From Paragordius varius (lineage: Eukaryota > Animalia > Nematomorpha): a DNA stretch of 64,000 nucleotides. The notes below the pieces were generated by a model that was given only the letters and a program-made list of their open reading frames with translations, was not told the DNA's origin and made no database searches. Shown piece by piece: positions 4,184 through 48,200 of this stretch; within the stretch, counting starts at the first letter, position 1, and each line of letters starts with the position of its first letter. The DNA is taken from assembly GCA_964247055.1 (NCBI GenBank), contig OZ176052.1, positions 2,108,001 through 2,172,000 on the forward strand, given 5' to 3'. A program made the position numbers and the translations under genes.

Positions 4184-5068
4184 CTAGCAAAAATAGTAAG
4201 TAATATATGTATTTAATCAGTTTCAGTCCCAAGGTTAATTCTTACAGACAACATGTTTTAAAAGCATTTACTGAAAAAAAACTAAAATCTGATAAATTCA
4301 AAAAACTCTATGAATTAAATATCGTTGTTATCAGGCATGGCATAGTTTCTTTCTTCATAATACAACTCATAAAACCCAAATATCCTTGAAACATATAGGT
4401 AGTTAACATAAATTCCGCGCCTACCTCGTTTTTTATTAAACGATAAAAAATTATTAAAAAATGAATTTGTAAATAAAAATATACCAAGATGACATAAATT
4501 TTCAAAATCTCGTAACCTATTATTATTATATTGTTAAACCATTAAATATAAAAGTTCTGTTGTCCTTTACATCACTATATTAAAAATGCGCAAGGCATTC
4601 TTTAAAGCAAATTTCAAAGTTAACGAGACTATAAAAATTTTAAGACTATGATAAAAAATATTGTATTAAAAGTAAGTGGTCAAGGTAAAATACCTCATAT
4701 CCAAATTATCTCATATATAACGTTAGATGTAAAAAAGATAGTTAGTTGTATAGTAAAAAATTACAATATATCCTGTTACACAAATAAAACATAATTTTAG
4801 TGTATTTTATATTAACAAGGTGTCTAAAATATATTGTTATATGTAAAAACTGACCTGATATTGAGCGATCATTTGTCATTTGTTGGGTTGAATCGTTGCA
4901 TGTTTGTTCCTAAAAGATGGAAAAAAGGTGTGGTAAGAAATTCCAAAACTTTTTATATTCAACAAAGATCACTTATAATAATCGAAAGTTATGTTTTACA
5001 TAAATTATTGCTGAATTTAAATATATAAAAAGCTTTTCTTCAAAAAGTTTTTTTTTTGAAAAAAATAC

Positions 5069-8000
5069 CGTTTTTACGGCAACATTTTCCAGAGATGCGG
5101 GTGGCAAATAATTGCGGACAATGGATGAAGTGAAATGGGACGATGCCCCTTTTAACCTTAGGGTCCTTCGATTAACTCGATTATTAACTATAACACTTTG
5201 TGGTTGAGACGTTTGGGATGTTTGAGCAGAAACATTTTTGGTAAAGTCAAGCGTCGGTTCAATCATAGATTCATCATTTGGTTCCTTTTTAATCGAATGA
5301 TATGTATTATCATCTGTAATCATTTTATTAATTATGGATTGTTTCTTCCCATCCACGGAGGAAATAATTTTGTTTAATTCAGTTTGTTGGTGTTGTTGTT
5401 GGTTCTTTTTAAGCGTTCCATAAACTTTTTGGTAAAGTTCAGAACGTGTGGTGGCATGCACCCTTTTAAGATGGATCCGTAAGTTTATGGCATACCCAAA
5501 CGATAAGTGACAGTATATACATTCATAGGGTTGAACGACCCCATGTCGATTTTTGTAATGCATGCGCAGGTCACAACTCCACTTTGTGCTATACGCACAA
5601 TATCCACAATGTTTATCTTTTTCGTGGGCTGGGACGCGTCTGTACACCAGAGGTGTTTTCTTTTTGTCTCGTTTTTGTAATAGCTGTGCAGAATCGTTTT
5701 CAATATTGGTATTATCGGCTCTTGGGGTAATGGACAAGAGATACGCCCTTAGTTTCCGAGTGAATTCAGTTTTATCAATCGTTTTGCTGTCTGAATGAGA
5801 GATATACATGTGCATGATATAATCTTCAAACGATGTAAAGTGTAGTAAAGATGTGGTGCATACCGCACATGCAATTTTGTCAAGCGATTTAATCTGTTCT
5901 ATATGCACCATTTGGATATGGTGGAGAAAATGGTCGAGTCTGGTAAATTCCAAATTTTTACATCCTTCATCGTTTGCGTTGCGGAATATACAGGTGAATG
6001 TTTGAGCAAGAATAGTGTTAGAAAATGAAGCATTACCCGCTAAAGACTCGTGCATTTCATCTTCGTCAAAGCCGTGTAAATCCTCGCTGAGTGCTACAGA
6101 AACCGTATCTTCCATATTGGTGTCAGAATTATAATCCTGAGCACTGGAAGATCTAATAACGCCACCACAAGGCGACCTTGTCGTTTTATTCATTTTGTGA
6201 TGATGATGGGTTTGATGAAAATTTAGACCTTGAAAACTGTTGCATGAATAGGTGCACGTATCACACCGATATGCCAAGTTTGTGGAATGATGCCTTTTCC
6301 TATGTCGCTCATAGGTTGAGGGATTCACCGTTTTAAAGTCACAAACACTACATCGAAATAAATAGGGGGATTTTGCATTTTTATTTGGGGGAGTTTTATG
6401 TGCCCTTTTCCTGTCAGAGTCAAACAGGGCTTTAACTGTTTCAATCATTTTCGCTTTACCATCATCTCGAATCATGGCAGAATTGGTGTTTGGTAAATGT
6501 GTTTCGTTAAAATCATCCATAATACTGCTGCTGTCATTGTTCTTCCCATTTATCTCGTCGCTTTCTTCTTTTTTTATTACGCCTACTACTTCCTCAAACA
6601 ACATAATTTTATTACTGTTGCTGTTGTTGATGTTACATTGTAGGTTTCCGCCGCCGCCCCCTTTGCGATAATGACATTTTGCCTCATGCAATTTCATTTG
6701 GCCTTGAGATGTATCACAATATTTGTTGCACGTTTTACAACGATAAAGTGTAATCTTATTACATGGGAGGGGATCACAAGTGGGTGGTGTAATACAAGAA
6801 TCTTCTAATTTATTGCTGTTATGATTATTACTGCTATTATTATAATGGGGAGAAATTGAATTAGTCTGCAAGTATTGTTTAAGTAAAGGAACATTATCGG
6901 CTGAGATGAAAGAATTTTTGTCGTTTATATCATCATTACTACCAATTTCATCTTTGGGTTTTAGGGGCTTATTTTCATGTTCTAATAATGACAAATTCAT
7001 TTCTTTCATCGCCTGTGTATAATAAGTAAATTGAGAAGAGCTATTGTAGGGTAGAAGGGGTGGTGGTGTTGATCGGACAACCGTCCCATACATTTTAGAG
7101 TAAATAGCTAAAGTTTCGTTATTATTACTCAACATTTTATTATCATCATTATTATCGATTATAATAGTGCTGTCTTCGTTGTTTTTTTGTTCATCACCAC
7201 CAACAATGTTTGTTGTTTTGGATATAATGTTGGTATTGCTTCTGTTGCAATTATTTTTATTATTGCCATGATAAAGTTTACTTAATAACAACACATTTGG
7301 TGATGGTTTTGTGTTGGCACATGATATGAGCGTAGAATTTTCGTCATTATTATACGGTTTTTCAACAAACGAATCCGAGTTTCTGACTGTGTCCGCAATG
7401 TACGCATTGGGTGAAGGGCAACAAAGTATTTTGTACAATGTTGTAACATCTTTAAACTCTGCCGCATTTATGCGGTGTTTTATGGCTTGGTGTTGGAATA
7501 AACCATCAAAATTTGACGTTGTAAATTGACAGAAATTACATTTAATTTCAGGACTTTTGGGTTTATCAACTAAGGGATCATCAACAGTATTATTCATGTT
7601 TGAGTTAGTTGTTGAAAGTGTTTGTTTAATATTATTATTATCCGTCAAAACCTGGGAATTTTCACCCCTTAAATTTGTTGGACTCGGCGTAGCATTGTAG
7701 TAAAAGTTATTAGAGGGTGGTGCATGCAAATTATTAGTATTATTATTATTATTGTTGTTCAAATATTTGTTGGTACTGAAAGTATGATGATAGTGTTGGT
7801 TGTTTTTGGTAGATTCGTTTCCTTCTATGGTAGTGTTTAGTAGTGGTTTTGTTGAAGGGGGCAATGAACTATCATCTACATTATTCTGTATTCGATTTTG
7901 ATTACCATTAGAACTAACAGACTTGTCAGAATAAAAACGGTTTTTGTTTATGTTACTGTTATTGTTATTATTATTATGATGTAAAAAAAGGTTGTTATTA

Positions 8001-9556
8001 TAGCTACTTTGGTTTTGTAATGTTGTACTTTTATTATTACTGTTACCACTGTAAGTTCTAGAATCTGACCTCTTACTCCCCATCATCATATTCAGAGTAT
8101 TTGTTGGTGAAGGAGAAAGTTTTGGTGTATTCATAATAGTAATCAAATTAGTAGATGAAACTGTTGAAAGTAAGGGTGAAGAACTATTCGTAATTGGTTG
8201 TTGGCTTTGTTTTTTATTATTAACCAGGGCCTCAAACAGCTTTGATGATGAATGATTTTCAATTCGAGATTTCAATATTTCATCACTATTATCAACAATG
8301 TTTGAGGTCGAATACTTGAATATACTTTCTGCCTCTAGATTTCGGTTGATGCGGTCCGCCAAAGGTGAAATGGTAGAATTTGAGTTAGTTTGAGAGGTGT
8401 AGTTTGCTGCCTTTCTAATAATGATTGAATCTCTCACTGCATTTTTATCATGGTTAGCCATGTATGATTCTCTGTGATTTGCCTGATATAGCTTAGTGTA
8501 TTGTTTTAACAAACGTTCATCATTATCGTCATGGTTTAGTGGTGGGACAGGATTCATTGATGAGCTACTAGATGCCAATTGTGATTGATGCATTTTTAAA
8601 TGATTTAAGAATTCCATATCATTGTCACGCAAACTTGTCAAGCAAATGGGACACTTGGTTATATTAGACGACGGCTCTTCCACACATTTATCCATATTAT
8701 TAATGAGTGATAAGGGACCATCATGAATATTCTGATTTGAGTGGGCATTAGCTGCTACGATTAAGCCTACTTTATTTATCTCATTTATTATTTGCTCAGA
8801 GTTTTTATTATTATTGCTGATGTGGTTGTAATTTAAGCCAACTTTTTTAGTAGTAGCAACAGCAGTACCAAACATTGCTGCAGTTGTTGTGTTAAAGTTA
8901 TGTACCATTTTCATGTGCTTATCATAAGCATTTTCCGACATAAAGAATGCTTCACATAAATCACATTGCCAATTCATAGAGGATGACGGACTCGTTATTA
9001 TTTGACAATTTTTATTAGGATTGTTTTGCTGTACGTTGCCGTTGTTTATGTACAATTTTAATCTTTTACTGCTAATACCATCCAACAAATCTTCTTGAGA
9101 ACTGTGGTTTCTATGTTCCTCATCATTAGTAACATTTGAATGTCCTTCTTCTGTATAATTACTACTACTGGTCAACAATGCATTGTACAAACTACTTTTA
9201 TTGCTATATCCATTATTTGTTGCATAAGAATTAACATTAGAATTAGAATTTAGAAGTAGAGAGTTGCTAGAAGAAGGATACGACGAAACAAAATTAGGTG
9301 ACGCTTGTGGTACATTGCTGCTGCTATTCGTGTTATTATTAATATTGTTGTTGTGGTTGGTACCGTTAGAAGCAAATAAGGTAGAATCTCTCACATGATG
9401 TCTGTAATCCAAGTGTCGTTTTATGCTTTGCTTATATTCAGAGACGAAATCGCACAAAGGACATTTGTAATTTAATTTGGCCGGCATACCAGGGGTCGTG
9501 GACGGTACATGTACTTTACTTATGTTGGAGATGATTGCATTAGCAAACATATTCAT
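5069..9556 (-). CDS. Multi-C2H2 zinc-finger transcription factor with about 11 dispersed fingers and Asn/Ser-rich linkers; one large exon
   Basis: 1527-aa ORF with C2H2 motifs such as CPLCDFVSEYKQSIKRHLDYRH, CSVCDFKTVNPSTYERHRKRH, CGYCAYSTKWSCDLRMHYKNRH and CIYCHLSFGYAINLRIHLKRVH. The ORF tail after ...VAVKT (FFSKKKLF...) looks like intron read-through past a GTATTT donor at 5068. Confidence 0.85.
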
Positions 9557-37591: not shown

Positions 37592-40500
37592 TCATGTACG
37601 ACTTTTTTCAACAGCCACTTCCAGCGATATATAAACATCGCATCGAAAGGTATCCATTAAGCTTTGACTAACTTTATCACTAATTTTACGGATTCTTTCC
37701 CCACTAGGACCAATAATTATTTTCTAAAATTAATAAAAATACAGAAAGAAATAAAAAAGCATGTATGCATGATATATAAAATTCGAACTCCAAAACGATT
37801 TTGTAATCCAATGACTTATTAGGTTGCTTTTAAGAAAAAAGCCAACGTTCAAAATTAGTTTAAAACCAATTATCGTAAAATTTTAATTATTAAAATCCAT
37901 TCTTAGAGAAAATTAAAAGTTACAAGTATGTTACCACAAATTAATCATTTTTTTGCTTAATTTAGATTTCTATTATATAAACTAAAATTAATATATTTTT
38001 TTACACAAAAATTCATCTATTAAAAAGTAAAACCCTATAATATAAGTTCATTATGAGAGATTTTACCATTAAGTTGTCTTTGGGGCATTTGATACTAGCA
38101 CGAATACGTAAAAGCCCAGATTCTTGTATGTAATATTCAATTATTTTCTAAAAATATTATTACAATTAATTATATTTTATAATCAAATAAAATTTATTAA
38201 AATTAATAAAATCAACCCTCTCATTTATAACATTGGAAAAAAGCGAAAACGGCTATTTTAACCCTAAAAACCGTCTATTATATTATTTTTTTGAGTCTTA
38301 TAAAAATACTTATTAAAATATTTGATTTTCTAATGATATGGTTTTTAAGAATCGATAACATAAATGTTTTATAAAAAAAACCTTTTTTATCCTATCAACC
38401 ATATTCAGCAGTTACATTTTTAAAAGGTGATAATCATTATATTGGAATAAAAAGTTGAAAAATCAGTTTTTTTACTGTGAAAAAAAAGAGCTACAACAAA
38501 AAGAATTAACTCACACACAATTATTTTAAATGTACAGTAAAAATTGAGATTTTACGGACAAAACGTAAAAAGACAAATATTTTTTTTTGGTAATTCGCTA
38601 TATTTTTTTAAACTTTATTTTCTTGATATCAATTCCTTGTTTTAAATTGCCTAAAATAAAAATGTATATTGGTTACACAATCAATTATATGTAATTTACA
38701 TTTATAATTATTTATAAAATAAAAATTAAGGTATAAGTATGATGTATTTTGAAAAACATATTTAGTTTTCTATATATCCTTACAATGTTGAGTATGTATG
38801 GTATCTGGAAATTTAAATGGTTTAATAGCTCTTGTCGTATGGCATCAATGACAATTTGTTCTGGTTGCTGATCTGTTACATATTGACTGTTATATTTCCA
38901 AGCTTGGTAAGGGGCTTCACACATAAGACAATCCTTAAAAATAAAAATAAATCTTAATTTAGATGCAACATTAAATTTTTTAAAAAGTATTTATGACAAA
39001 AAAAGATCCATTTTACAGTATTATAAAAACAAAATGTAAAATACAAGTAAAAAATGAAATTATATGGACAAAACGTAAAAATATACTGACAAATATTTTT
39101 TTCAAAAGACGACCATACTTTTTAAATCTTGATTATTTTAATTATAACTCATTATTTTAAGAGAAAATGTATCAAATACAGATGTAAATAGATACATCAA
39201 TTTTATTTTATACAATGGTAGGTAATTATCATATGTAATATTAATGTATAAAAAAGTATGGTTGTCTTTTAGAAAAAAATATTTGTCTTTATATTTTTAC
39301 GTTTGTCCGTATAATTTCAGATTTTACTGTATATCGTAAGATACATTTATATGCCAAAAAACTAATTTTACATTAATTCAACTATAGCGATAAAATATAA
39401 AGAGTAAAAGACGCATATTTTTAGTACAGAAAACTTATTTTTGATGATTTTTTATAACCTATATATTATCAAATGTGAAATATAAAATTGAGTGTAAACA
39501 ACCAATTTATATAGCTACGCCTTTATTCATAAACTAAAACGATAGGTTTTTTAATAAACATTAATATATTACATGATTTTCATAGAAAAAAAGATTATCC
39601 TTTAACTTTTAAAAGTTTTGTGCCTTGTAATTTCAATTAATTCGCATTGTATTTTTTAAGGCTTAAAAAATTACCATTAATTCATCTAAGCCATCATTAT
39701 CAAGAGCAGAAACCATAAATATGGAGTAAAAATTTGGCCAGGATGTGGATTCACGTTTCAAAGAATTTGGTTCAAGCGGTAGATTTTTAGCGTCTAAAAA
39801 GCAAAAAAGCATTAACAATCGTTAAATTTTTCGTCTCTTTTTCTAAAAAAATTATCTAACTAATAAAAAAAATTCATTGTTTTAAATTGTGGACAATATA
39901 GAAAGATCACAGAATAAAATATTTTTGATATAATTTTTATATCATATCAGAGCAGAAAATCACCCTATTAATTGCTCCCATTTTATTCTATGAGTTTTCG
40001 TTGCATGATTAAATTATATAAGCATTGAACATCGTTAATATTATACCTTTTTTTAATTACCACCAAATTTAATAAAATTAGAGTAACATTTAAAATTATA
40101 AAGATAAACAAATATTATTTTTTATAAAGAATACCATATTGAAAAAGTATTTTAAAAATAACTACCGTTTTGGATTGACAGTAAAAATTCAAATTATACG
40201 GACAAAACGTAAAATATAAAGACAAATATATTTTTCTAAAAGACAACCATATTTTTTAAATCTTGAGTTTTTTCAATATAACTGATAGTTTTAAACTGCA
40301 AATTATAAAATAGAAATGTAAATTGGTAGCACAATCAATTATGTAGTTTTCGATTGTAATTAAATATTTCATATACCAAAAATAAGGTTTAGGATGGTTG
40401 TCTTTTGAAAAAGTATATTTGTCTTTATATTTTTACGTTTTGTCCGTATAATTTCATCAATTTTTACTGCAAACATTAAAATTATGGTTTCCTTTGGAAG

Positions 40501-43500
40501 TATTAGCTTCTAAGTTTTATGGTTTGTTAAGTTTTTAAATTTAATTACAAAAAAAACCTTCAAATATTTTAGGATCTAATGATTCATGATTCGAATAAAC
40601 GAGAGAATTTGTTTTATCATGGACGTGATGTGATTTCATTATAGTTGGGATTGTTTTAGGCGACGCGTTAGAAATATCATCCTTTTCATTTATATAAATT
40701 TTGTCCTTTTCAGACATGTTAGGTTGATTGGTTTCCGAGTTTTTAACTGAGCTCATTTTACCAATCGTTCTACGGGCATATCTAAATTTATAATTGTTAC
40801 GGTGTTACACGCAAATTCTAAATATATACTTTGGTTGTATATCATAATTTTCTGTGAGATTTGAATTGTCTTATTTTGATATTTTTTTGTATTAAGTAAA
40901 TATTATATCCTTTGTTACTCGAAATTTTATGGTTAGAATGCAAATTATGATCACCTAAAAATAGTATATATAAAGCACAAAAAACCGAATAAACATCATT
41001 TCAAGTTTACGTTTTATACCCTTGTTACCTTTCTAACATCTGGTGGCCAAGACGAGTAACAAAAAAATATAAAAATAAGACAATTCAAATCTCACAGAAA
41101 ATTATGATATACAACCAGAGTATATATTTTAAATTTGCATGTAACATTACTTCACCCTTAGGCGAAATAATACTAGTTTGAATGAGAACATCATGTGTTG
41201 GGTGAGTCACGAATCATTTGCATAAGGTACATCATAGTTTGAAGGATAACATGTGTTGTGTGTGCCGACGGATCATTTGATCTATGGCTCACGCCATCCA
41301 TTTCTTGCTAAACTGGTCCAGTCGCACTGAAATACTATCGGCGCTGTGAGGAATCTGAACGGTATCCTTTTATAACGGAAACATCCTCTTAGCGTTGAAA
41401 TCGTACAGGGTGTAGCGTCTCTTTAGCTCGGCCTGGGGAGGTAGGCGTCTTACAGATCAATCTTGTTAAAAGCTTCTTGCGGTGAAATATTATAACTTTT
41501 GATTTTTCTATACTTGCCATTTAGGGTGCCCACTAACCTTTCTACCATCCCATTACTTTTAGGATGATAGGGGGTTACCCTCACGTGTTAATTCCCAAGT
41601 TTGTTATAGTGGTTGTTAAGTACGAAATATTGAAATAAGAAGCGTTATCACTTATTACCGTCCTCGGAAACCCAAACCTGACAACGGTTTCCTCGAGTTT
41701 GTGCAATATGTTTACCGAATTAACCCGTTTAAACATGAACCCTTCTGACTATTTTGATAAGCTATCAATCACCAACAACCAAAAATACCCGTCAACTGGT
41801 CCCGCTATATCGATGTGTAAACGCTCCCATATCGCAGCATTTGGATCCCATTGATAAGTGGGATTTTCACCTAGGCTTGGCTTGTTTCCTTAAGCTAAAT
41901 TGGCTGTACCTTCTTACCAAATCGTTCTCTAATTTTGGCCAAAAACAGGTAAACCTTGCCATTGCTTTCATCGTTTCTACATTATTACTGTGTAAATAAT
42001 TGACAACATTCGCCTGTAAGCTTTCTGGGATGATTATTCGATCGTTCAAACTTAGCAATCCATATTGGTACGAAATTTCTCCTTTCCGGTTCGTAAACCC
42101 AGCCAACTCAACATCACTCCAATCTTGATTATGAATAGCCTTGATTAACTTCTGCAACATTTTATCCTTAACTGTCTCTCTCCGGATCTCATCTCGACTT
42201 AAATGAACATTATGACAATTTAGGAACCTAAGATGTCTCGTTACCATGTAATCTCTATCAATTGTGTCAGTATTATCTTCACCGGGACATCTTGACAAGT
42301 AATCGGCTCTATTTTTCGGACCCGCCTGATACCTTAATTCAAAATCATAATCATTAAGACGGTTAACCCATCTTAAAACTTTCGAATTCTGAATTTCTTT
42401 CAAATTTCTATCCATATTTATTAACCTAACCAGTGGTAAGTGGTCTGTCAAAATTGCGGACAAGCTTTTAACAAGATTGATCTGTAAGACGCCTACCTCC
42501 CCAGGCCGAGGATACATCCTCTATGATTTCAACGCTAAGAGGATGTTTCTGTTACAAAAGGATACCGTTCAGATTCCCCACAGAGCCGATAGTATTTCAG
42601 TGCAATTGGACCAGTTTAACAAGAAATGGTCCAGGATGGCGTGAGCCATAGATCAAATGATTCGTCGACAAACCCAACACATGATGTTCTCATTTAAACT
42701 AGTATTATTTCGCCTAAGGGTGAAATAATGTTACATGCAAATTTGAAATATATACTTTGGTTGTATATCATAATTTTCTGTGAGATTTGAATTGTCTTAT
42801 TTTTATATTTTTTTTGTACTAGGTAAGTATTATATCCTTTGTTACTCGAAATTTTATGATTAGAATGCAAATTATGATCACCTAAAAATAATATAGATAA
42901 AGCACAAAAAACCGAATAAACATCATTTCAAGTTTACGTTTTATACCCTTGTTACCTTTCTAACATACGGTAAAAATTGAAATTATACGGACAAAACGTA
43001 AAAATGTAAAGACAAATATTTTTTTATAAAAGACAACCATACTTTTCAATCATTATTTCTTATATAAATTATTTAATTACAATCTTAAGTAACATAATGT
43101 GTGACTACACATCTCTATATCATACCAAATATTGACTTAAAAAATTATATTTTTGATAAAATTAAGATAATATAACAGTGATTACCAGCTGTGTAATGAA
43201 GAAATAATGGATTAATAACCCAAAAATGTATATTCTATCGAATAATGCATCCTAACAAAGTGTTTACAAAAACTAATGCATATATAACCTATTAAACGTC
43301 AAAAAACATAATTTCTATTATATTATGAACCTTAATTTTTCAAGCGCTTCTAGGTTACGTAATATTTCAGGTCTTTTATTTTCACATTCATCGCTATTTC
43401 CATTATCCCTTTGCTGCATATTATTATCATCAAATTTATTTGCAAACTTATCTTTCAGAGGTGTAAATTCAGGCGTTTTATTAGTCACTAAGATTTCGGG

Positions 43501-45187
43501 TTGCGATTGACCGCGAAAATATCCATTAGTTAAGCATTTCACTGTATCCAACAAAAGGGATTTAGGATGAATTAAATCAACCTATTATAAGATATGATCA
43601 ACATATTCACCTTCTTACATTAAAAATATTAACCATTTCTAAAATATTTGGATTGATAAGGCAAAAATATTATCATGAAAAATATGAATTGATAAAATAG
43701 ATAGTTTTTAATGTTGATATTTATCGTAAAATGCATATATGCAATTGTTGAATTTTAAACAGTCGGTTAAATTTTTTTGAAACTTTAAGGGTTATAAAAA
43801 ATATTTTTTAAATTTAAAACAATAATAATATATTTTATAAGAACTAACAAATTTTTCCAATCAATTAATATATATATATATATATAATTTATGAAAACAA
43901 ATCAATACTATAATTATTAATAAATGATCACTACAAATAAAAGCTAAACTTTCCTCTTACAGAAAAGAAATCTCGATTTCGTAAACTGTATAATATAATT
44001 AATTTTTAATAGAAAAATATCGAACATTGGATAAAATCTAAACAAGGTTATTAGTAACTAAAATTTTTCAAACAATAATTATAATCACATTATATAATAC
44101 TCTGATCTAATATTCTACCTTGTTTAGAATTAGTATCGATTTTTTATCCTTATTTTGTTCAAGAATATCCAGAGTTAAAAGATCTAATTTATGTCGAGTC
44201 CATATATTTGATGCATCCACTACCACACAAACTAAAATAATTCATTTCTTAATATATTAAGAAATTATTCCAATCAATAAAACAATTTTTTGACTTAAAT
44301 AAAGGAAAGAAAAAGGTGAAAATACATATATTTTTCGTTTTTTCTTAATTTTGACAAAAAGAATTGTTCTTTACCGTAAAAAAAGTATTTATGACAAAAT
44401 CAAATATTTTATATTGGTATGTTTATAAATCAAACATAATATTTTATTCATTCCGTATAGTCTAGATATACTTTTAATGATTAAAGAAGCATATAAAAAA
44501 TTTGGTATTCTAAAGAAAATAGCGCATAAAATGTTAAAAAAACTTTGTGAAAAACTATATTATCTATTATTTTTATTAAATTTTTAACAGTTATAATACC
44601 AAAATTTTTTAATATATATAGAATGACTTTCAGTAAAAAATAATTAAATTATCCATGATTTTATTTAATTTAAAAAATATTTACTGATATCGGCATCTTT
44701 TGCAGCGGTTTGCGGAAGGGTGGACATTTCAATATCAAGATTATGCCTATGCATTAATCCAAATAGTACTTTTTGCAATGCTTTTTGTTAACAAGGCCTG
44801 GTGTATCGTAAAAAGCTAATTGGATATCCTCATTGGTAAAAACTGAAACAATGTTTTTTCGGGTTGTGTGAACTTTTCTGGATTCGGATAAGACCTATAT
44901 AATAAATTAAAAATCGTATACCCTCCAATTCATAAGCTTATTTATTAAAGTAGATTTTCCCGAATTGGGTAAACCAATAATTGACACCTTAAGAAATTTT
45001 GCTTGATCAAATTGTTCTGGTGGAAGTTTTGACAAATATAATTGTTCATCTAAAAGTTATATGAATCGAAACTTTTAGTTTTTGGAATGGATTTCGTTAA
45101 AATTTCCTTATTTATGGTTTGACACTGGACGGAAGAATAGTTTTTAAAAATATTTGGAAAAATAATTTTCCATGCTTTTTGAAGCAT
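37592..45187 (-). CDS. ERAL1: Mitochondrial Era-like GTPase, 11 exons, about 499 aa
   Basis: Exons: 45073-45187, 44922-45049 (G1 GLPNSGKST), 44770-44894 (HTTR, DTPG), 44685-44746, 44119-44231 (..ILNK), 43331-43581 (VD..), 40558-40781, 39675-39793 (WPNF..VSAL), 38784-38933 (WKYNSQYVTDQQPEQIV..QELLNHL..IPY), 38067-38147, 37592-37723 (KIIIGPSGERI..LMDTFRCDV; KH domain). All phases are consistent and the exons total 1500 nt. Confidence 0.92.
38535..38700. mobile_element. MITE family B, truncated copy
   Basis: TA|cagtaaaaattgagattttacggacaaaacgtaaaaagacaaatat; the right arm is missing. Confidence 0.65.
39045..39329. mobile_element. MITE family B copy
   Basis: aagtaaaaaatgaaattatatggacaaaacg...gtttgtccgtataatttcagattttactg|TA. 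Confidence 0.8.
40179..40469. mobile_element. MITE family B copy
   Basis: cagtaaaaattcaaattatacggacaaaacgtaaaatataaagacaaata...tttgtctttatatttttacgttttgtccgtataatttcatcaatttttactg. Confidence 0.85.
40803..41038 (+). repeat. 5' LTR (236 bp)
   Basis: tgttacacgc...ctttctaaca; direct repeat of 42729-42965. Confidence 0.9.
41470..42462 (-). pseudogene. Gypsy pol fragment (RNase H end, linker, integrase), inverted relative to the LTRs
   Basis: ILTDHLPL, LRWVNRLNDYDFELRYQAGPKNRADYLSR, FWPKLENDL, WERLHIDIAGP, VISDNA and PYHPKSNGMVER on the minus strand, with stops and frameshifts. Confidence 0.88.
42729..42965 (+). repeat. 3' LTR (237 bp)
   Basis: tgttacatgc...ctttctaaca. Confidence 0.9.
42968..43050. 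mobile_element. MITE family B left arm, at whose terminus the LTR element inserted
   Basis: cggtaaaaattgaaattatacggacaaaacgtaaaaatgtaaagacaaata follows the TSD directly. Confidence 0.65.
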
Positions 45188-45278
45188 GTTTTTGCTGTCT
45201 GGTTTGCCTTAAGTCATAAATTCAGATGTGAATTGCGTATGACTTAAATATCAAAAATTATTTTTCAATTTTGCGATT
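45188..45278. promoter_or_regulatory. Putative 91-bp bidirectional promoter with a palindromic core
   Basis: Lies between the divergent ATGs of ERAL1 (45187) and the SLC38A10-like gene (45279). Inverted repeat ttaagtcata (45209-45218) / tatgacttaa (45238-45247), with an inner aattc/gaatt pair. Confidence 0.65.
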
Positions 45279-48200
45279 ATGGTCGATATAGATACCTCTC
45301 AAACCATTGTATTAGGCAATAGCATTATTGGTGTTAGCATATTAGCACTTCCATTTGCCTTTCAAAAAGTTTTTTTGTTATAAACTTTTGTAGTGTGGTA
45401 TTTTATTGGCCATCCTAATCTTTCTGATTGCTTGTTGGATAAATAAATCATCATGCCGGTTACTCATTCGATCTGCTGTGTTAACCAAAACAAATTCTTA
45501 CGAAGATGCATGTTAGATTTATATGTATAACTTAATTTTTAGCGAGTATAATATTGGGCTTTTCTGGATGCGTTATAACACAAATTAGGTATATTTTGAA
45601 TATATACAAAAATATAAACAGTTTAATCCTTTTCCTGTTTGGTATTTGTTCGGCTTACTTGATAGTTATTGGAGATTTGGTTCCCGAAGTTTTTTGTCGC
45701 ATGTTTGGATTACAAGTTTTTGATTATTTTAAAATTTTAGGATCCAAAAAGTACCAGAACATGGGTACTTTTATTTTTCTGTTCGGTTGTGATATTACCT
45801 CTTAGTTTTACGAACCGGATAGAACGAATGAATCGTGCCTCAACCCTATGTGTCATATTCTATATCCTTTTTACCCTTAAAGTATAATTATCATAATGCT
45901 TAAATATATTTTGCGAATATTTTTATACATCAAATATGCATTTAATTCTCATTTTTTATTGTTATTTCATAATATGATTTTAACAGAGTTCATTACTCAA
46001 ATCATTAAACCAAAAAAACTATAATATTTTAAGTTTTCTTTATATCATATTTTTTTATGTATAAACTCTATTTCATGATATTCATTGTTTTTTGTTTTAA
46101 ATTGCACATAAAAGGCAATTTTTCAAATTTTAAGAATTAGAGTTTATGTGTTCATATTTTTTTGTTATTCATATTATTTGGCTATAAATTTAAATAATTG
46201 CACTTACAGTCATGTATATGTAGAATTGACAGACGTTTTTAAATGATTATAATTTGTTTTTAATTGTAATGTTTTATATGTCAACTTTCAACATGCGCAT
46301 TTTTTAAGCATTAAAATAATAATAGCTTATTTATTGTAAACAATTAAAAACAAAGTAAAATCAATTATAAACGTATATCTGACAATTCTAAACATACATG
46401 ACTGTAAATTGAACCATTTCACCAGAAAATTGATCCTAAATTTGCAAAAAATATTTTAAGCCTATATCGGAATCAAAATTGCCTTAAAGGTCTTCTCATT
46501 ACAAAAATCTCCATAAGGGACGGGGATCATTATACTGGAATTCAGTGCACTATAATAATATATTATAAGTCCATAAATAAATTTATGTAATTTAGCTATT
46601 AAACGGTATTATTTAATTAATTCTATACATTTTGTGGTTTAAACATAGATTTTCTTTGAGGCATTACCCAAATTGGCTTTTCAACTTGATCAAATATTCT
46701 TCCAATTAACATTTTGGCACACGAAAGGATTATTGAATGCCCTACCTATTATAGCTTTATCCCTAACATGTCAAACGTAATTTAAATTTTTTTGGAATTT
46801 AAAGACTTTATTTTGTTTATTCAGGCGGCAATTGCTAATAATTTGGGTATATTTTCCTAAAAGCTAACTAGTCTGAAGGTATTTTTAAGACCTCATAATG
46901 AGTCAAAAACAATATTGAGCATTATGTTTGATTTTTATACAAATATATCTAAAATAATATCAAATTTTTAACATTTTTTTGACAAAGAAGGGTTATGATG
47001 CGGATCGCTACATATATACCATATACACTTCGAATTCACGCTTGAACAAATCATAAAAATTCAAATTCACCCTTGAACAATTTAAAATAATCTTAAAATA
47101 AATTTGGTTTCTGATATTGAAAATTTCCTATATTAGGCATTTTTTTACAAAATGTAATTTCGTTCAAAATTAAAATAAAACTGAAAAAATAATAAACTAT
47201 ACCGTGGGTAAATATTTCATATTAATGATGAGTTATATTAGCTTAAAAACATATAATTTATTTTTAGGGTGAATTTGAATTGTTCGAGGGTGAATTTGAG
47301 TTGTAAAGGGTATTATTAGTCAATTTGCTGTATATAATAAAATAATTTTTGATTTTTAGACAATTATTTCTGGTATACCAAGCTCTATCACACCCAAACC
47401 AAAAACGAATGGCCCGTATATATAACAATGCCATAGATACATGCACACTTTTATACATATTGGTAATTATACATCCTAATCTAGACTAAATATTACTTTA
47501 ATCCTAATATAAATTTCCATGCGCATATACGCGATTTGCACTTTTGAAAATTACTTTTTTAACATTTGAGATTTAACGGTTACTTAACATCTGTAATTCA
47601 TTTTAAACTAAAATTTTATTTTTGGGTTGTATACTATCACAATTCATATAGTTAGACATCTACCATATTTCTTTTTCATTTTAGATTTTGTATAATTTTT
47701 TTCACATATTCAAAAATTATTGTTTCATATAATATATAAAAAAATAACAGAAATTATTAAAATATTTAAAAAATTTCATGATATTATTTAATACAATTTC
47801 CAAATTCACCCTTGAACAATTCACTTAAAATATGAAATTCTGCTTACAATCAATATAATGCTGAAAAAATAATAAACTATGTCGTAAAAATATATTTCAT
47901 ATTAATGATGAGATATATTATCCCGAAACACATAATTTAGAGTGAATTTGAATTGTTCGAGGGTGATATTGAATTGTAAATGGTATATAAATAATGGATA
48001 ATAACACTAGACAACAAATTTTAACTTTTTTGAACTGCCATTCTTGTAAATTTAATATTTATTTCATTAAAGTACATAATTAGTATATCTGAAAAGAAAA
48101 TTGGTCTAGTATGGAAGAATTTTTTTATATGAGAGGTTATCGATAATTTTTGGCCCCGATTTAACATTAAACTCGAAATTTCGAAAATTAAAAGTTTTAG

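What the first reader, a model, noticed from the sequence alone, without database searches (positions are those of the whole stretch)
44747..45072. Three ultra-short spliceosomal introns (23, 27 and 23 nt) at the 5' end of ERAL1
Seen: introns 45050-45072 (GTTTCG...TTTTAG, 23 nt), 44895-44921 (GTATAC...TATAG, 27 nt) and 44747-44769 (GTACTA...GCATAG, 23 nt). Retaining any of them gives an in-frame stop. Removing them yields a GTPase domain that lines up without gaps against human ERAL1 as I recall it (GKSTLINKLMNWR|VLSESRKVHTTR; DTPGLVNKKHCKK|HNLD). Established: introns this short are below the usual animal range and are known mainly from ciliates and a few reduced parasites such as dicyemids. 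Inference: this organism has a spliceosome that handles ~23-nt substrates even though its genome is transposon-rich.
Basis: partly seen in the sequence, partly recalled or inferred. Interest (0 to 1): 0.88.

Follow-up and report, generated by a model that had tools for sequence, protein, structure and literature searches.

The report
Three tiny introns in ERAL1
A mitochondrial ribosome-assembly gene (ERAL1) of an AT-rich relative of horsehair worms is interrupted by three introns of only 23, 27 and 23 bases. They sit exactly where rat, ribbon worm, tardigrade and another hairworm have ordinary introns, so they are almost certainly real, although no RNA could be examined.

Summary
On the minus strand, 45072-45050 (23 nt), 44921-44895 (27 nt) and 44769-44747 (23 nt) are GT...AG segments. 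Keeping any of them stops the frame. Removing all three gives an open frame.

- **Protein match:** the spliced product aligns without gaps to human mitochondrial Era (PDB 8csp, E 8e-15).
- **Gene model:** I extended it to 11 exons and 433 aa, intact, with G1-G4 GTPase motifs and a KH_2 domain. It is 53% identical to the ERAL1 of Gordionus (Nematomorpha).
- **Strongest evidence:** exact exon maps of five annotated orthologues show that all three tiny introns share position and phase with introns elsewhere. Those are 41/227/50 nt in Gordionus, 398/327/238 nt in the nemertean Lineus and 1955/343/191 nt in rat. Exon sizes (128, 78+47, 62, 113, 150, 81) are conserved.
- **Junction choice:** junctions 2 and 3 are the only frame-preserving GT-AG choices nearby.
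- **RNA evidence:** none could be obtained.
- **Literature:** introns under 30 nt in animals are published only for myxobolid myxozoans and Dicyema (PMC13644364). I found none for Nematomorpha.
- **Earlier notes:** the scan already noted the same class of micro-introns on other pieces of this same genome. This is one more well-anchored case.

The parts
45073..45187 (-). ERAL1 exon 1 (115 nt, ATG at 45187, ends in phase 1). It encodes a basic N-terminus that looks like a mitochondrial presequence.
   Evidence: It aligns to the Gordionus N-terminus..KTK|NEQ.. against ..RTK|DEQ...
45050..45072 (-). Micro-intron 1, 23 nt, GTTTCG...TTTTAG, phase 1.
   Evidence: Same alignment column and phase as introns of 41 nt (Gordionus), 78 nt (tardigrade), 398 nt (Lineus) and 1955 nt (rat).
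44922..45049 (-). Exon 2, 128 nt, holding the P-loop (G1) GLPNSGKS.
   Evidence: The orthologous exon is exactly 128 nt in Gordionus, tardigrade, Lineus and rat.
44895..44921 (-). Micro-intron 2, 27 nt, GTATAC...TATAG, phase 0, with two in-frame TAA codons.
   Evidence: the only frame-keeping GT-AG pair. Same column and phase as introns of 227, 418, 327, 343 and 1583 nt in Gordionus, tardigrade, Lineus, rat and crayfish.
44770..44894 (-). Exon 3, 125 nt (G2 TTR, G3 DTPG). It equals the 78-nt plus 47-nt exons of other animals, fused.
   Evidence: Crayfish also has a 125-nt exon here.
44747..44769 (-). Micro-intron 3, 23 nt, GTACTA...GCATAG, phase 2 (Lys codon split AA|G).
   Evidence: the only frame-keeping GT-AG pair. 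Same column and phase as introns of 50, 238, 191 and 2464 nt in Gordionus, Lineus, rat and crayfish.
44685..44746 (-). Exon 4, 62 nt.
   Evidence: The orthologous exon is 62 nt in Gordionus, Lineus and rat.
44232..44684 (-). Ordinary intron 4, 453 nt, GTAAAT...TTTTAG, phase 1.
   Evidence: Position shared with Gordionus, Lineus and rat.
44119..44231 (-). Exon 5, 113 nt. It ends in ..NK, the start of the G4 motif NKVD.
   Evidence: The orthologous exon is 113 nt in Gordionus, Lineus and rat.
43582..44118 (-). Ordinary intron 5, 537 nt, phase 0.
43331..43581 (-). Exon 6, 251 nt, covering the end of the GTPase domain and a lineage-variable linker. Its 3' end is tentative.
39843..43330 (-). Intron 6, about 3.5 kb (boundaries tentative), holding a retroelement-like ORF at 41867-42517.
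   Evidence: weak Integrase_H2C2 match, below the cutoff.
39794..39842 (-). Tentative 26-nt micro-exon (39842-39817) followed by a candidate fourth 23-nt intron (39816-39794). This is needed to link the phase of exon 6 to the next exon.
   Evidence: Frame logic only. There is no homology support, and the candidate has no A between its positions 6 and 21, so it is weak.
39675..39793 (-). Exon 8, 119 nt (..SWPNF..SALDNDG..).
38784..38933 (-). Exon 9, 150 nt.
   Evidence: The orthologous exon is 150 nt in Gordionus, Lineus and rat.
38067..38147 (-). Exon 10, 81 nt.
   Evidence: The orthologous exon is 81 nt in Gordionus and rat.
37592..37723 (-). Exon 11, 132 nt including the stop codon; C-terminal KH domain.
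   Evidence: Pfam KH_2 PF07650, E 1.9e-5, 24.9 bits against a cutoff of 22.

Best explanation
The three segments are genuine U2-type GT-AG spliceosomal introns of the ERAL1 orthologue. ERAL1 is the mitochondrial Era-like GTPase that chaperones 12S rRNA. The animal is related to the hairworm Gordionus (Nematomorpha).

They are ancestral bilaterian introns that have shrunk in this lineage to about the smallest size its spliceosome can still handle. Other introns of the same gene stayed at 0.3-3.5 kb.

Each is presumably recognised across the intron (intron definition) by three signals: a minimal 5' site (GT plus A or T), an A-A about 15-16 nt from the 5' end that would serve as branch point, and the terminal AG.

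Retention of any of them puts a premature stop in the message, so unspliced transcripts would give no protein and would probably be degraded.

Shown here: the sequence, the frame logic, the homology, and the conservation of intron position and phase. Inferred: excision in RNA, the branch point, and the fate of unspliced RNA.
For: - **Termini and frame:** exact GT...AG ends, and the frame is restored only by removing all three.
- **Human match:** the spliced product aligns gaplessly to human ERAL1 residues 116-198 across two junctions.
- **Tiling on Gordionus:** translations of the window's exons 2-5, given by reference, tile Gordionus ERAL1 end to end. Only the two split codons are missing.
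- **Whole gene:** an intact 11-exon, 433-aa gene, 53% identical to Gordionus and 33-38% to mollusc, nemertean, tardigrade, crustacean, mite, rat and one further, unnamed ERAL1. The GTPase domain is gapless in all nine sequences. The last exon matches KH_2.
- **Intron positions :**
  - Column 163, phase 1: 23 nt here, 41 nt Gordionus, 78 nt tardigrade, 398 nt Lineus, 1955 nt rat.
  - Column 206, phase 0: 27 nt here, then 227, 418, 327 and 343 nt in the same four species, plus crayfish 1583 nt.
  - Column 247, phase 2: 23 nt here, 50 nt Gordionus, 238 nt Lineus, 191 nt rat, 2464 nt crayfish.
- **Exon sizes:** 128, 125 (= 78 + 47), 62, 113, 150 and 81 nt, the same as in rat.
- **No competing junctions:** junctions 2 and 3 have no alternative GT-AG solution.
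- **Possible branch point:** in all three introns a TAAC or TAAT motif starts at position 13-14 from the 5' end. This matches the A residues described for myxobolid and Dicyema tiny introns (PMC13644364).
- **Neighbouring gene:** after removal of 25-, 31- and 33-nt GT-AG segments its N-terminus gives one colinear Aa_trans match, E 6.8e-13.
Against: No protein of this species' ERAL1 was found in the 5.8-billion-protein collection over candidate lengths 57-860 aa, nor in the 1.84-billion representative library.

Junction 1 lies in a less conserved part of the protein and has one alternative 56-nt solution.

A naive window-wide scan for GT-AG segments that join open frames showed no excess over control dinucleotides. 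Frame logic alone would therefore not be convincing; the case rests on homology and intron-position conservation.

The branch-point reading rests on three to seven short sequences.
Confidence: 0.88

Rival explanations
1. The locus is a decaying pseudogene, and the three segments are small insertions that broke the frame.
For: The unspliced sequence has stops in every frame. No transcript-derived protein of this species was found.
Against: After removal of GT-AG segments, all 11 exons give an intact 433-aa frame with G1-G4 motifs and a KH_2 domain. Random insertions would not start with GT, end with AG, and fall at three ancestral intron positions in the right phases.
Confidence: 0.03
2. The segments are assembly artefacts, that is, spurious short insertions in the consensus.
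For: None specific. No reads could be laid on the region.
Against: Assembly errors do not produce 23-27-nt GT...AG blocks at conserved intron positions. The neighbouring gene shows four more such blocks. Earlier notes of the scan report the same class on other pieces of the genome (unchecked by me).
Confidence: 0.02
3. The segments are removed at the DNA level, like the 26-28-bp internal eliminated sequences of ciliates or programmed DNA elimination in some nematodes, and not by splicing.
For: The size range resembles ciliate IESs (my own knowledge). DNA-level and RNA-level removal cannot be told apart without reads.
Against: The ends are GT/AG, not TA/TA. The positions and phases are those of spliceosomal introns in five other animals. 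Gordionus has 41-50-nt annotated introns at the same sites.
Confidence: 0.02
4. Introns are present but with other junctions. In particular, intron 1 would be the 56-nt alternative (45072-45017), or the segments would be alternatively retained.
For: One search lists a 56-nt GT-AG alternative for junction 1 that also keeps the frame.
Against: That alternative deletes 11 residues (NEQLYLSKLPP..) that align with Gordionus DEQNQLKLLSP.. and with the D/E-E motif of other animals. It would also shorten the otherwise exactly conserved 128-nt exon. Junctions 2 and 3 have no alternative.
Confidence: 0.05

Closest known systems
Ultra-short introns of myxobolid myxozoans (Henneguya salminicola, Thelohanellus kitauei, Myxobolus; median 22-27 bp), PMC13644364
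   Same: GT-AG introns under 30 nt in a parasitic animal, sitting at conserved positions between conserved exons. The 5' splice-site motif is weak. A few A residues lie upstream of the AG, and their distance to the AG grows with intron length.
   Different: There, tiny introns are the genome-wide majority. Here only 3 (perhaps 4) of the gene's 10 introns are tiny, and the rest are 343-3488 nt. The lineage also differs (Ecdysozoa, not Cnidaria). RNA long reads validated the myxozoan introns; none were available here.
Dicyemid introns (Dicyema sp. median 27 bp, two thirds under 30 bp, PMC6543705; D. japonicum mean 38 bp, PMC6736024)
   Same: Same size class, conserved exon-intron structure, a parasitic animal, and a genome with many repeats (49% in D. 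japonicum).
   Different: Dicyemid genomes are small (67.5 Mb) and nearly all their introns are miniaturised. Here micro-introns sit beside kilobase introns carrying transposon remains.
ERAL1 of Gordionus sp. m RMFG-2023 (assembly GCA_954871325.2, locus L001)
   Same: Orthologous gene, 53% identical. It has the same intron positions and phases and the same exon sizes 128, 62, 113, 150 and 81. It also shows short introns at the 5' end and kilobase introns further 3'.
   Different: The three orthologous introns there are 41, 227 and 50 nt, none under 30. Gordionus keeps a 60-nt intron between the 78- and 47-nt exons that the window's gene has lost.
Tiny introns of ciliates (Paramecium about 25 nt; Stentor 15-16 nt)
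   Same: Comparable length. Retention leads to a premature stop; the 3n intron here carries in-frame stops, as reported for Paramecium (my own knowledge of Jaillon et al. 2008).
   Different: These are unicellular eukaryotes with uniformly tiny introns, with no homology or shared descent of the trait.

Membership tests
U2-type GT-AG spliceosomal intron | GT at the 5' end and AG at the 3' end | tested here: met
   All three segments.
U2-type GT-AG spliceosomal intron | Removal joins flanking exons into a continuous reading frame that encodes the conserved protein | tested here: met
   For junctions 2 and 3 this is the unique solution.
U2-type GT-AG spliceosomal intron | Orthologous introns at the same codon and phase in other species | tested here: met
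   Gordionus, tardigrade, Lineus, rat and crayfish.
U2-type GT-AG spliceosomal intron | Branch-point adenosine upstream of the 3' splice site | tested here: inconclusive
   TAAC or TAAT starts at position 13-14 in all three. The sample is too small and there is no lariat data.
U2-type GT-AG spliceosomal intron | Absent from mature mRNA | not testable with these tools
No transcript-derived protein was found.
Animal ultra-short intron class (<30 nt; Myxobolidae, Dicyema) | Intron length below 30 nt | tested here: met
   23, 27 and 23 nt.
Animal ultra-short intron class (<30 nt; Myxobolidae, Dicyema) | Tiny introns dominate, with a median intron length under 30 nt | tested here: not met
   In this gene 3-4 of 10 introns are tiny and six are 343-3488 nt. 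The genome-wide distribution was not measured.
Animal ultra-short intron class (<30 nt; Myxobolidae, Dicyema) | Reduced splice-site motifs (GTa / AG only) | tested here: inconclusive
   Micro-introns start GTTTCG, GTATAC and GTACTA, whereas the long introns mostly start GTAA. There are too few cases to build a logo.
Era / ERAL1 GTPase family | TRAFAC GTPase domain with G1 (GxPNxGKS), G2 (TTR), G3 (DTPG) and G4 (NKxD) | tested here: met
   GLPNSGKS, HTTR, DTPG and NKVD are present in the spliced product. The best PDB hit is human mitochondrial Era.
Era / ERAL1 GTPase family | C-terminal type-2 KH RNA-binding domain | tested here: met
   The last exon matches KH_2 PF07650 with 24.9 bits against a cutoff of 22.
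Era / ERAL1 GTPase family | Mitochondrial localisation and 12S rRNA binding | not testable with these tools
   Only a basic N-terminus with no acidic residue in the first 27 residues. This is inference.

The most novel reading that the evidence does not exclude
This hairworm-related lineage would be a third, independent origin of sub-30-nt introns in animals, the first in Ecdysozoa.

Its form would also be different. A discrete micro-intron class would be set by a fixed ruler of about 15 nt from the 5' splice site to the branch A. That class would be concentrated at the 5' ends of genes and would coexist with transposon-swollen kilobase introns.

Standard gene finders and aligners reject introns this short. 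Part of the reported 'rampant loss of universal metazoan genes' and of the low BUSCO scores of hairworm genomes could therefore be an annotation artefact.
Probability: 0.3. Interest if true: 0.8.

Novelty: new member of a known kind. Interest (0 to 1): 0.66.

Why it matters
A 2026 survey of 51 animal genomes found introns under 30 nt only in myxobolid myxozoans and Dicyema. It treated 30 nt as the previously assumed floor for animals (PMC13644364).

Here, three introns of 23-27 nt sit at positions that are demonstrably ancestral and orthologous to rat introns 1, 2 and 4 of ERAL1. The organism is a relative of horsehair worms whose genome is not compact. If RNA confirms them, two things follow:

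- Extreme intron shrinkage can act on single introns without genome-wide compaction.
- There is a natural series at the same sites (23 nt here, 41-50 nt in Gordionus, hundreds of nt elsewhere) for asking what sets the minimum intron size.

There is also a practical consequence. Gene prediction and read alignment with default minimum intron lengths would break such genes. From my own knowledge those defaults are about 39 nt in AUGUSTUS and 20-21 nt in HISAT2 and STAR. That bears on gene-loss claims for this phylum; the Gordionus genome reports only 71.6% BUSCO completeness (10.1101/2023.06.26.546503).

Tried and rejected
- **Own-species transcripts in the protein collections.** None of four searches found a protein more than 67% identical:
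  - phmmer of exon 3 against 1.84 billion representatives;
  - word search with Gordionus ERAL1, candidate lengths 270-860 aa;
  - word search with a typed 104-aa spliced peptide, 57-182 aa;
  - word search with an alignment of Gordionus residues 40-200 plus the window's exon translations, 89-282 aa.
- **Identifying the assembly:** an exact look-up of the window's 1527-aa ORF found nothing on record.
- **Window-wide statistic:** I counted GT...AG segments of 15-70 nt that join two open frames of at least 25 or 35 codons, against five control dinucleotide pairs. There was no enrichment at any length. The test is swamped by noise in this AT-rich sequence and says nothing either way.
- **Synteny:** the neighbouring transporter gene is not next to ERAL1 in the Gordionus locus.
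- **Rfam scan of the window:** no match.
- **Pomacea ERAL1 locus:** not on record.
- **Rejected readings:** pseudogene, assembly indel, IES-like DNA elimination and alternative junctions (see the rival explanations).
- **Literature:** no paper in the library mentions introns in a nematomorph genome.

Full report
**1. The observation**

The gene lies on the minus strand. Reading 45187 downwards there is an ATG at 45187, followed by three GT...AG segments:

| Segment | Coordinates | Length | Ends |
|---|---|---|---|
| Intron 1 | 45072-45050 | 23 nt | GTTTCG...TTTTAG |
| Intron 2 | 44921-44895 | 27 nt | GTATAC...TATAG |
| Intron 3 | 44769-44747 | 23 nt | GTACTA...GCATAG |

The unspliced stretch has stops in all three frames. 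The two 23-nt segments shift the frame, and the 27-nt one carries two in-frame TAA codons. Removing all three yields one open frame containing GLPNSGKS, HTTR and DTPG.

**2. What the protein is**

- An 85-aa stretch of the spliced product has human mitochondrial GTPase Era (8csp_a) as its best solved-structure match. E is 8e-15, and query 2-84 aligns to chain 116-198 without a single gap across junctions 2 and 3. Bacterial Era and Der follow.
- A phmmer search of exon 3 against 1.84 billion representatives found no identical protein. It did find a 491-aa protein, 67% identical over the exon. A source names it 'GTPase Era, mitochondrial-like' of Gordionus sp. m RMFG-2023.
- Its gene lies on a 34.6-Mb chromosome of assembly GCA_954871325.2 (locus L001).
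- With that protein as a guide I extended the window's gene to 11 exons, 1302 coding bases and 433 residues, ending at 37592.
- The product is 53% identical to Gordionus. It is 33-38% identical to ERAL1 of a mollusc, a nemertean, a tardigrade, a crayfish, a mite, rat and one further, unnamed animal sequence.
- The last exon matches Pfam KH_2 above the curated cutoff.
- The organism is therefore a relative of Gordionus, that is, a nematomorph or close kin. Its GC content is about 26%, like the 26.9% reported for Gordionus (10.1101/2023.06.26.546503). I could not name the species.

**3. Are the three segments introns?**

The decisive test available was conservation of intron position. I fetched the annotated loci of five orthologues. 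With a script that requires the exact annotated protein, I reconstructed their exon maps.

Exon sizes:

| Species | Exon sizes (nt) |
|---|---|
| Rat | 283-128-78-47-62-113-249-150-81-120 |
| Lineus | ..-128-78-47-62-113-561-150-78-120 |
| Gordionus | 151-128-78-47-62-113-175-228-137-150-81-123 |
| Window | 115-128-125-62-113-251-26-119-150-81-132 (125 = 78 + 47) |

Intron lengths at the three positions, placed on one MAFFT alignment:

| Column, phase | Window | Gordionus | Tardigrade | Lineus | Rat | Crayfish |
|---|---|---|---|---|---|---|
| 163, phase 1 | 23 | 41 | 78 | 398 | 1955 | none |
| 206, phase 0 | 27 | 227 | 418 | 327 | 343 | 1583 |
| 247, phase 2 | 23 | 50 | none | 238 | 191 | 2464 |

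The three tiny segments are thus the orthologues of rat ERAL1 introns 1, 2 and 4.

Two more checks agree:
- An alignment made only from references shows the window's exon translations tiling the Gordionus protein end to end. Only the two split codons are missing.
- For junctions 2 and 3 no other GT-AG pair of 12-90 nt keeps the frame. Junction 1 has one 56-nt alternative, which would delete 11 conserved residues and break the conserved 128-nt exon.

**4. What could not be shown**

Excision in RNA was not shown. Three searches of the 5.8-billion-protein collection, which includes assemblies of public RNA runs, covered candidate lengths of 57-860 aa. They found no protein of this species or of any hairworm other than Gordionus. 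This absence says only that no transcript was on hand.

**5. How it probably works**

The gene's ten introns fall into two classes: 23, 27, 23 (and perhaps one more of 23) against 343-3488 nt.

- **5' splice sites.** The tiny ones have weak sites (GTTTCG, GTATAC, GTACTA). Most long ones start GTAA.
- **Possible branch point.** In all three tiny introns a TAAC or TAAT motif begins at position 13-14 from the 5' end. This places an A-A at about 15-16 nt from the 5' splice site whatever the total length. In the 27-nt intron the extra bases lie between this motif and the AG. PMC13644364 describes the same pattern for myxobolid and Dicyema introns of 20-27 nt and interprets it as the branch point.
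- **Inferred mechanism.** I infer ordinary U2-dependent splicing by intron definition, at the minimum spacing between 5' site and branch, with almost no polypyrimidine tract.
- **Retention.** Every retention event creates a premature stop. That would let translation-coupled decay clear unspliced messages. This part is inference.

**6. Context in the window**

- The transporter gene transcribed divergently starts at the ATG at 45279, only 91 nt from the ERAL1 ATG. It opens with four GT-AG segments of 25, 31, 33 and 25 nt.
- With these removed, the frame stays open. A typed 101-aa stretch of the product, spanning the first three junctions, gives one colinear Aa_trans match at E 6.8e-13.
- Micro-introns are therefore not a peculiarity of ERAL1.
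- Gordionus shows a milder version of the same layout: 41-60-nt introns at the 5' end and 0.15-5 kb further on.

**7. Comparison with what is known**

- Introns under 30 nt in animals are published for dicyemids (median 27 bp, PMC6543705) and myxobolid myxozoans (median 22-27 bp, PMC13644364).
- The latter paper surveyed 51 animal genomes and found no other case. Its main text mentions no nematomorph.
- The Gordionus genome preprint and a comparative hairworm preprint do not mention introns at all.
- The present case is of the same kind as the published ones. It differs in being one class of a two-class distribution within single genes.
- Earlier notes of this scan report the same class on other pieces of this genome. 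I did not re-test those.

**8. Verdict**

The three introns are real with high probability (0.88). The remaining doubt is the missing RNA evidence.

The fourth 23-nt candidate I found at 39816-39794, with a 26-nt micro-exon, rests on frame logic only and lacks an internal A. It should be treated as tentative.

Noticed in passing
window 39794-39842 (minus strand): Joining exon 6 (phase 2) to the next conserved exon (which needs phase 1) requires a 26-nt micro-exon (39842-39817) followed by another 23-nt GT-AG segment (39816-39794). The alternative is a direct phase-1 splice from a GT inside exon 6 (near ..TTAC|GTAACC). The 23-nt candidate has no A between its positions 6 and 21, unlike the other micro-introns.
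   Followed up: partly
window 45369-45740 (plus strand): The divergently transcribed SLC38-like transporter gene (ATG at 45279) opens with four GT-AG segments: 25 nt (45369-45393), 31 nt (45512-45542), 33 nt (45589-45621) and 25 nt (45716-45740). The spliced N-terminus, across the first three junctions, gives a single colinear Aa_trans match (PF01490, E 6.8e-13).
   Followed up: partly
window 45187-45279: The start codons of ERAL1 (minus strand) and the transporter gene (plus strand) are only 91 nt apart. The two genes must share a very short bidirectional promoter region with minimal 5' UTRs.
   Followed up: no
window 44770-44894; L001 6626-6685: The ancestral phase-0 intron between the 78-nt and 47-nt exons is present in rat, Lineus and Gordionus (60 nt there). 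It is absent from the window's gene, and independently from crayfish, giving a fused 125-nt exon. Complete intron loss thus occurs beside extreme shrinkage.
   Followed up: yes
L001 6001-23102 (Gordionus ERAL1): The Gordionus orthologue has the same 5'-to-3' gradient in milder form. Its first four introns are 41, 227, 60 and 50 nt; the later ones are 154-5080 nt.
   Followed up: partly
window 41867-42517 (minus strand): A 216-aa ORF inside the 3.5-kb ERAL1 intron has a weak Integrase_H2C2 match (E 0.005, below the cutoff). This is consistent with a retroelement remnant swelling that intron.
   Followed up: partly
window 4973-9556 (minus strand): An uninterrupted 1527-aa ORF, rich in Asn and Ser low-complexity runs with scattered C2H2-like zinc-finger motifs. 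It stands out as a very long single exon in a genome whose other genes are finely split. It is not on record in the exact-sequence index.
   Followed up: no
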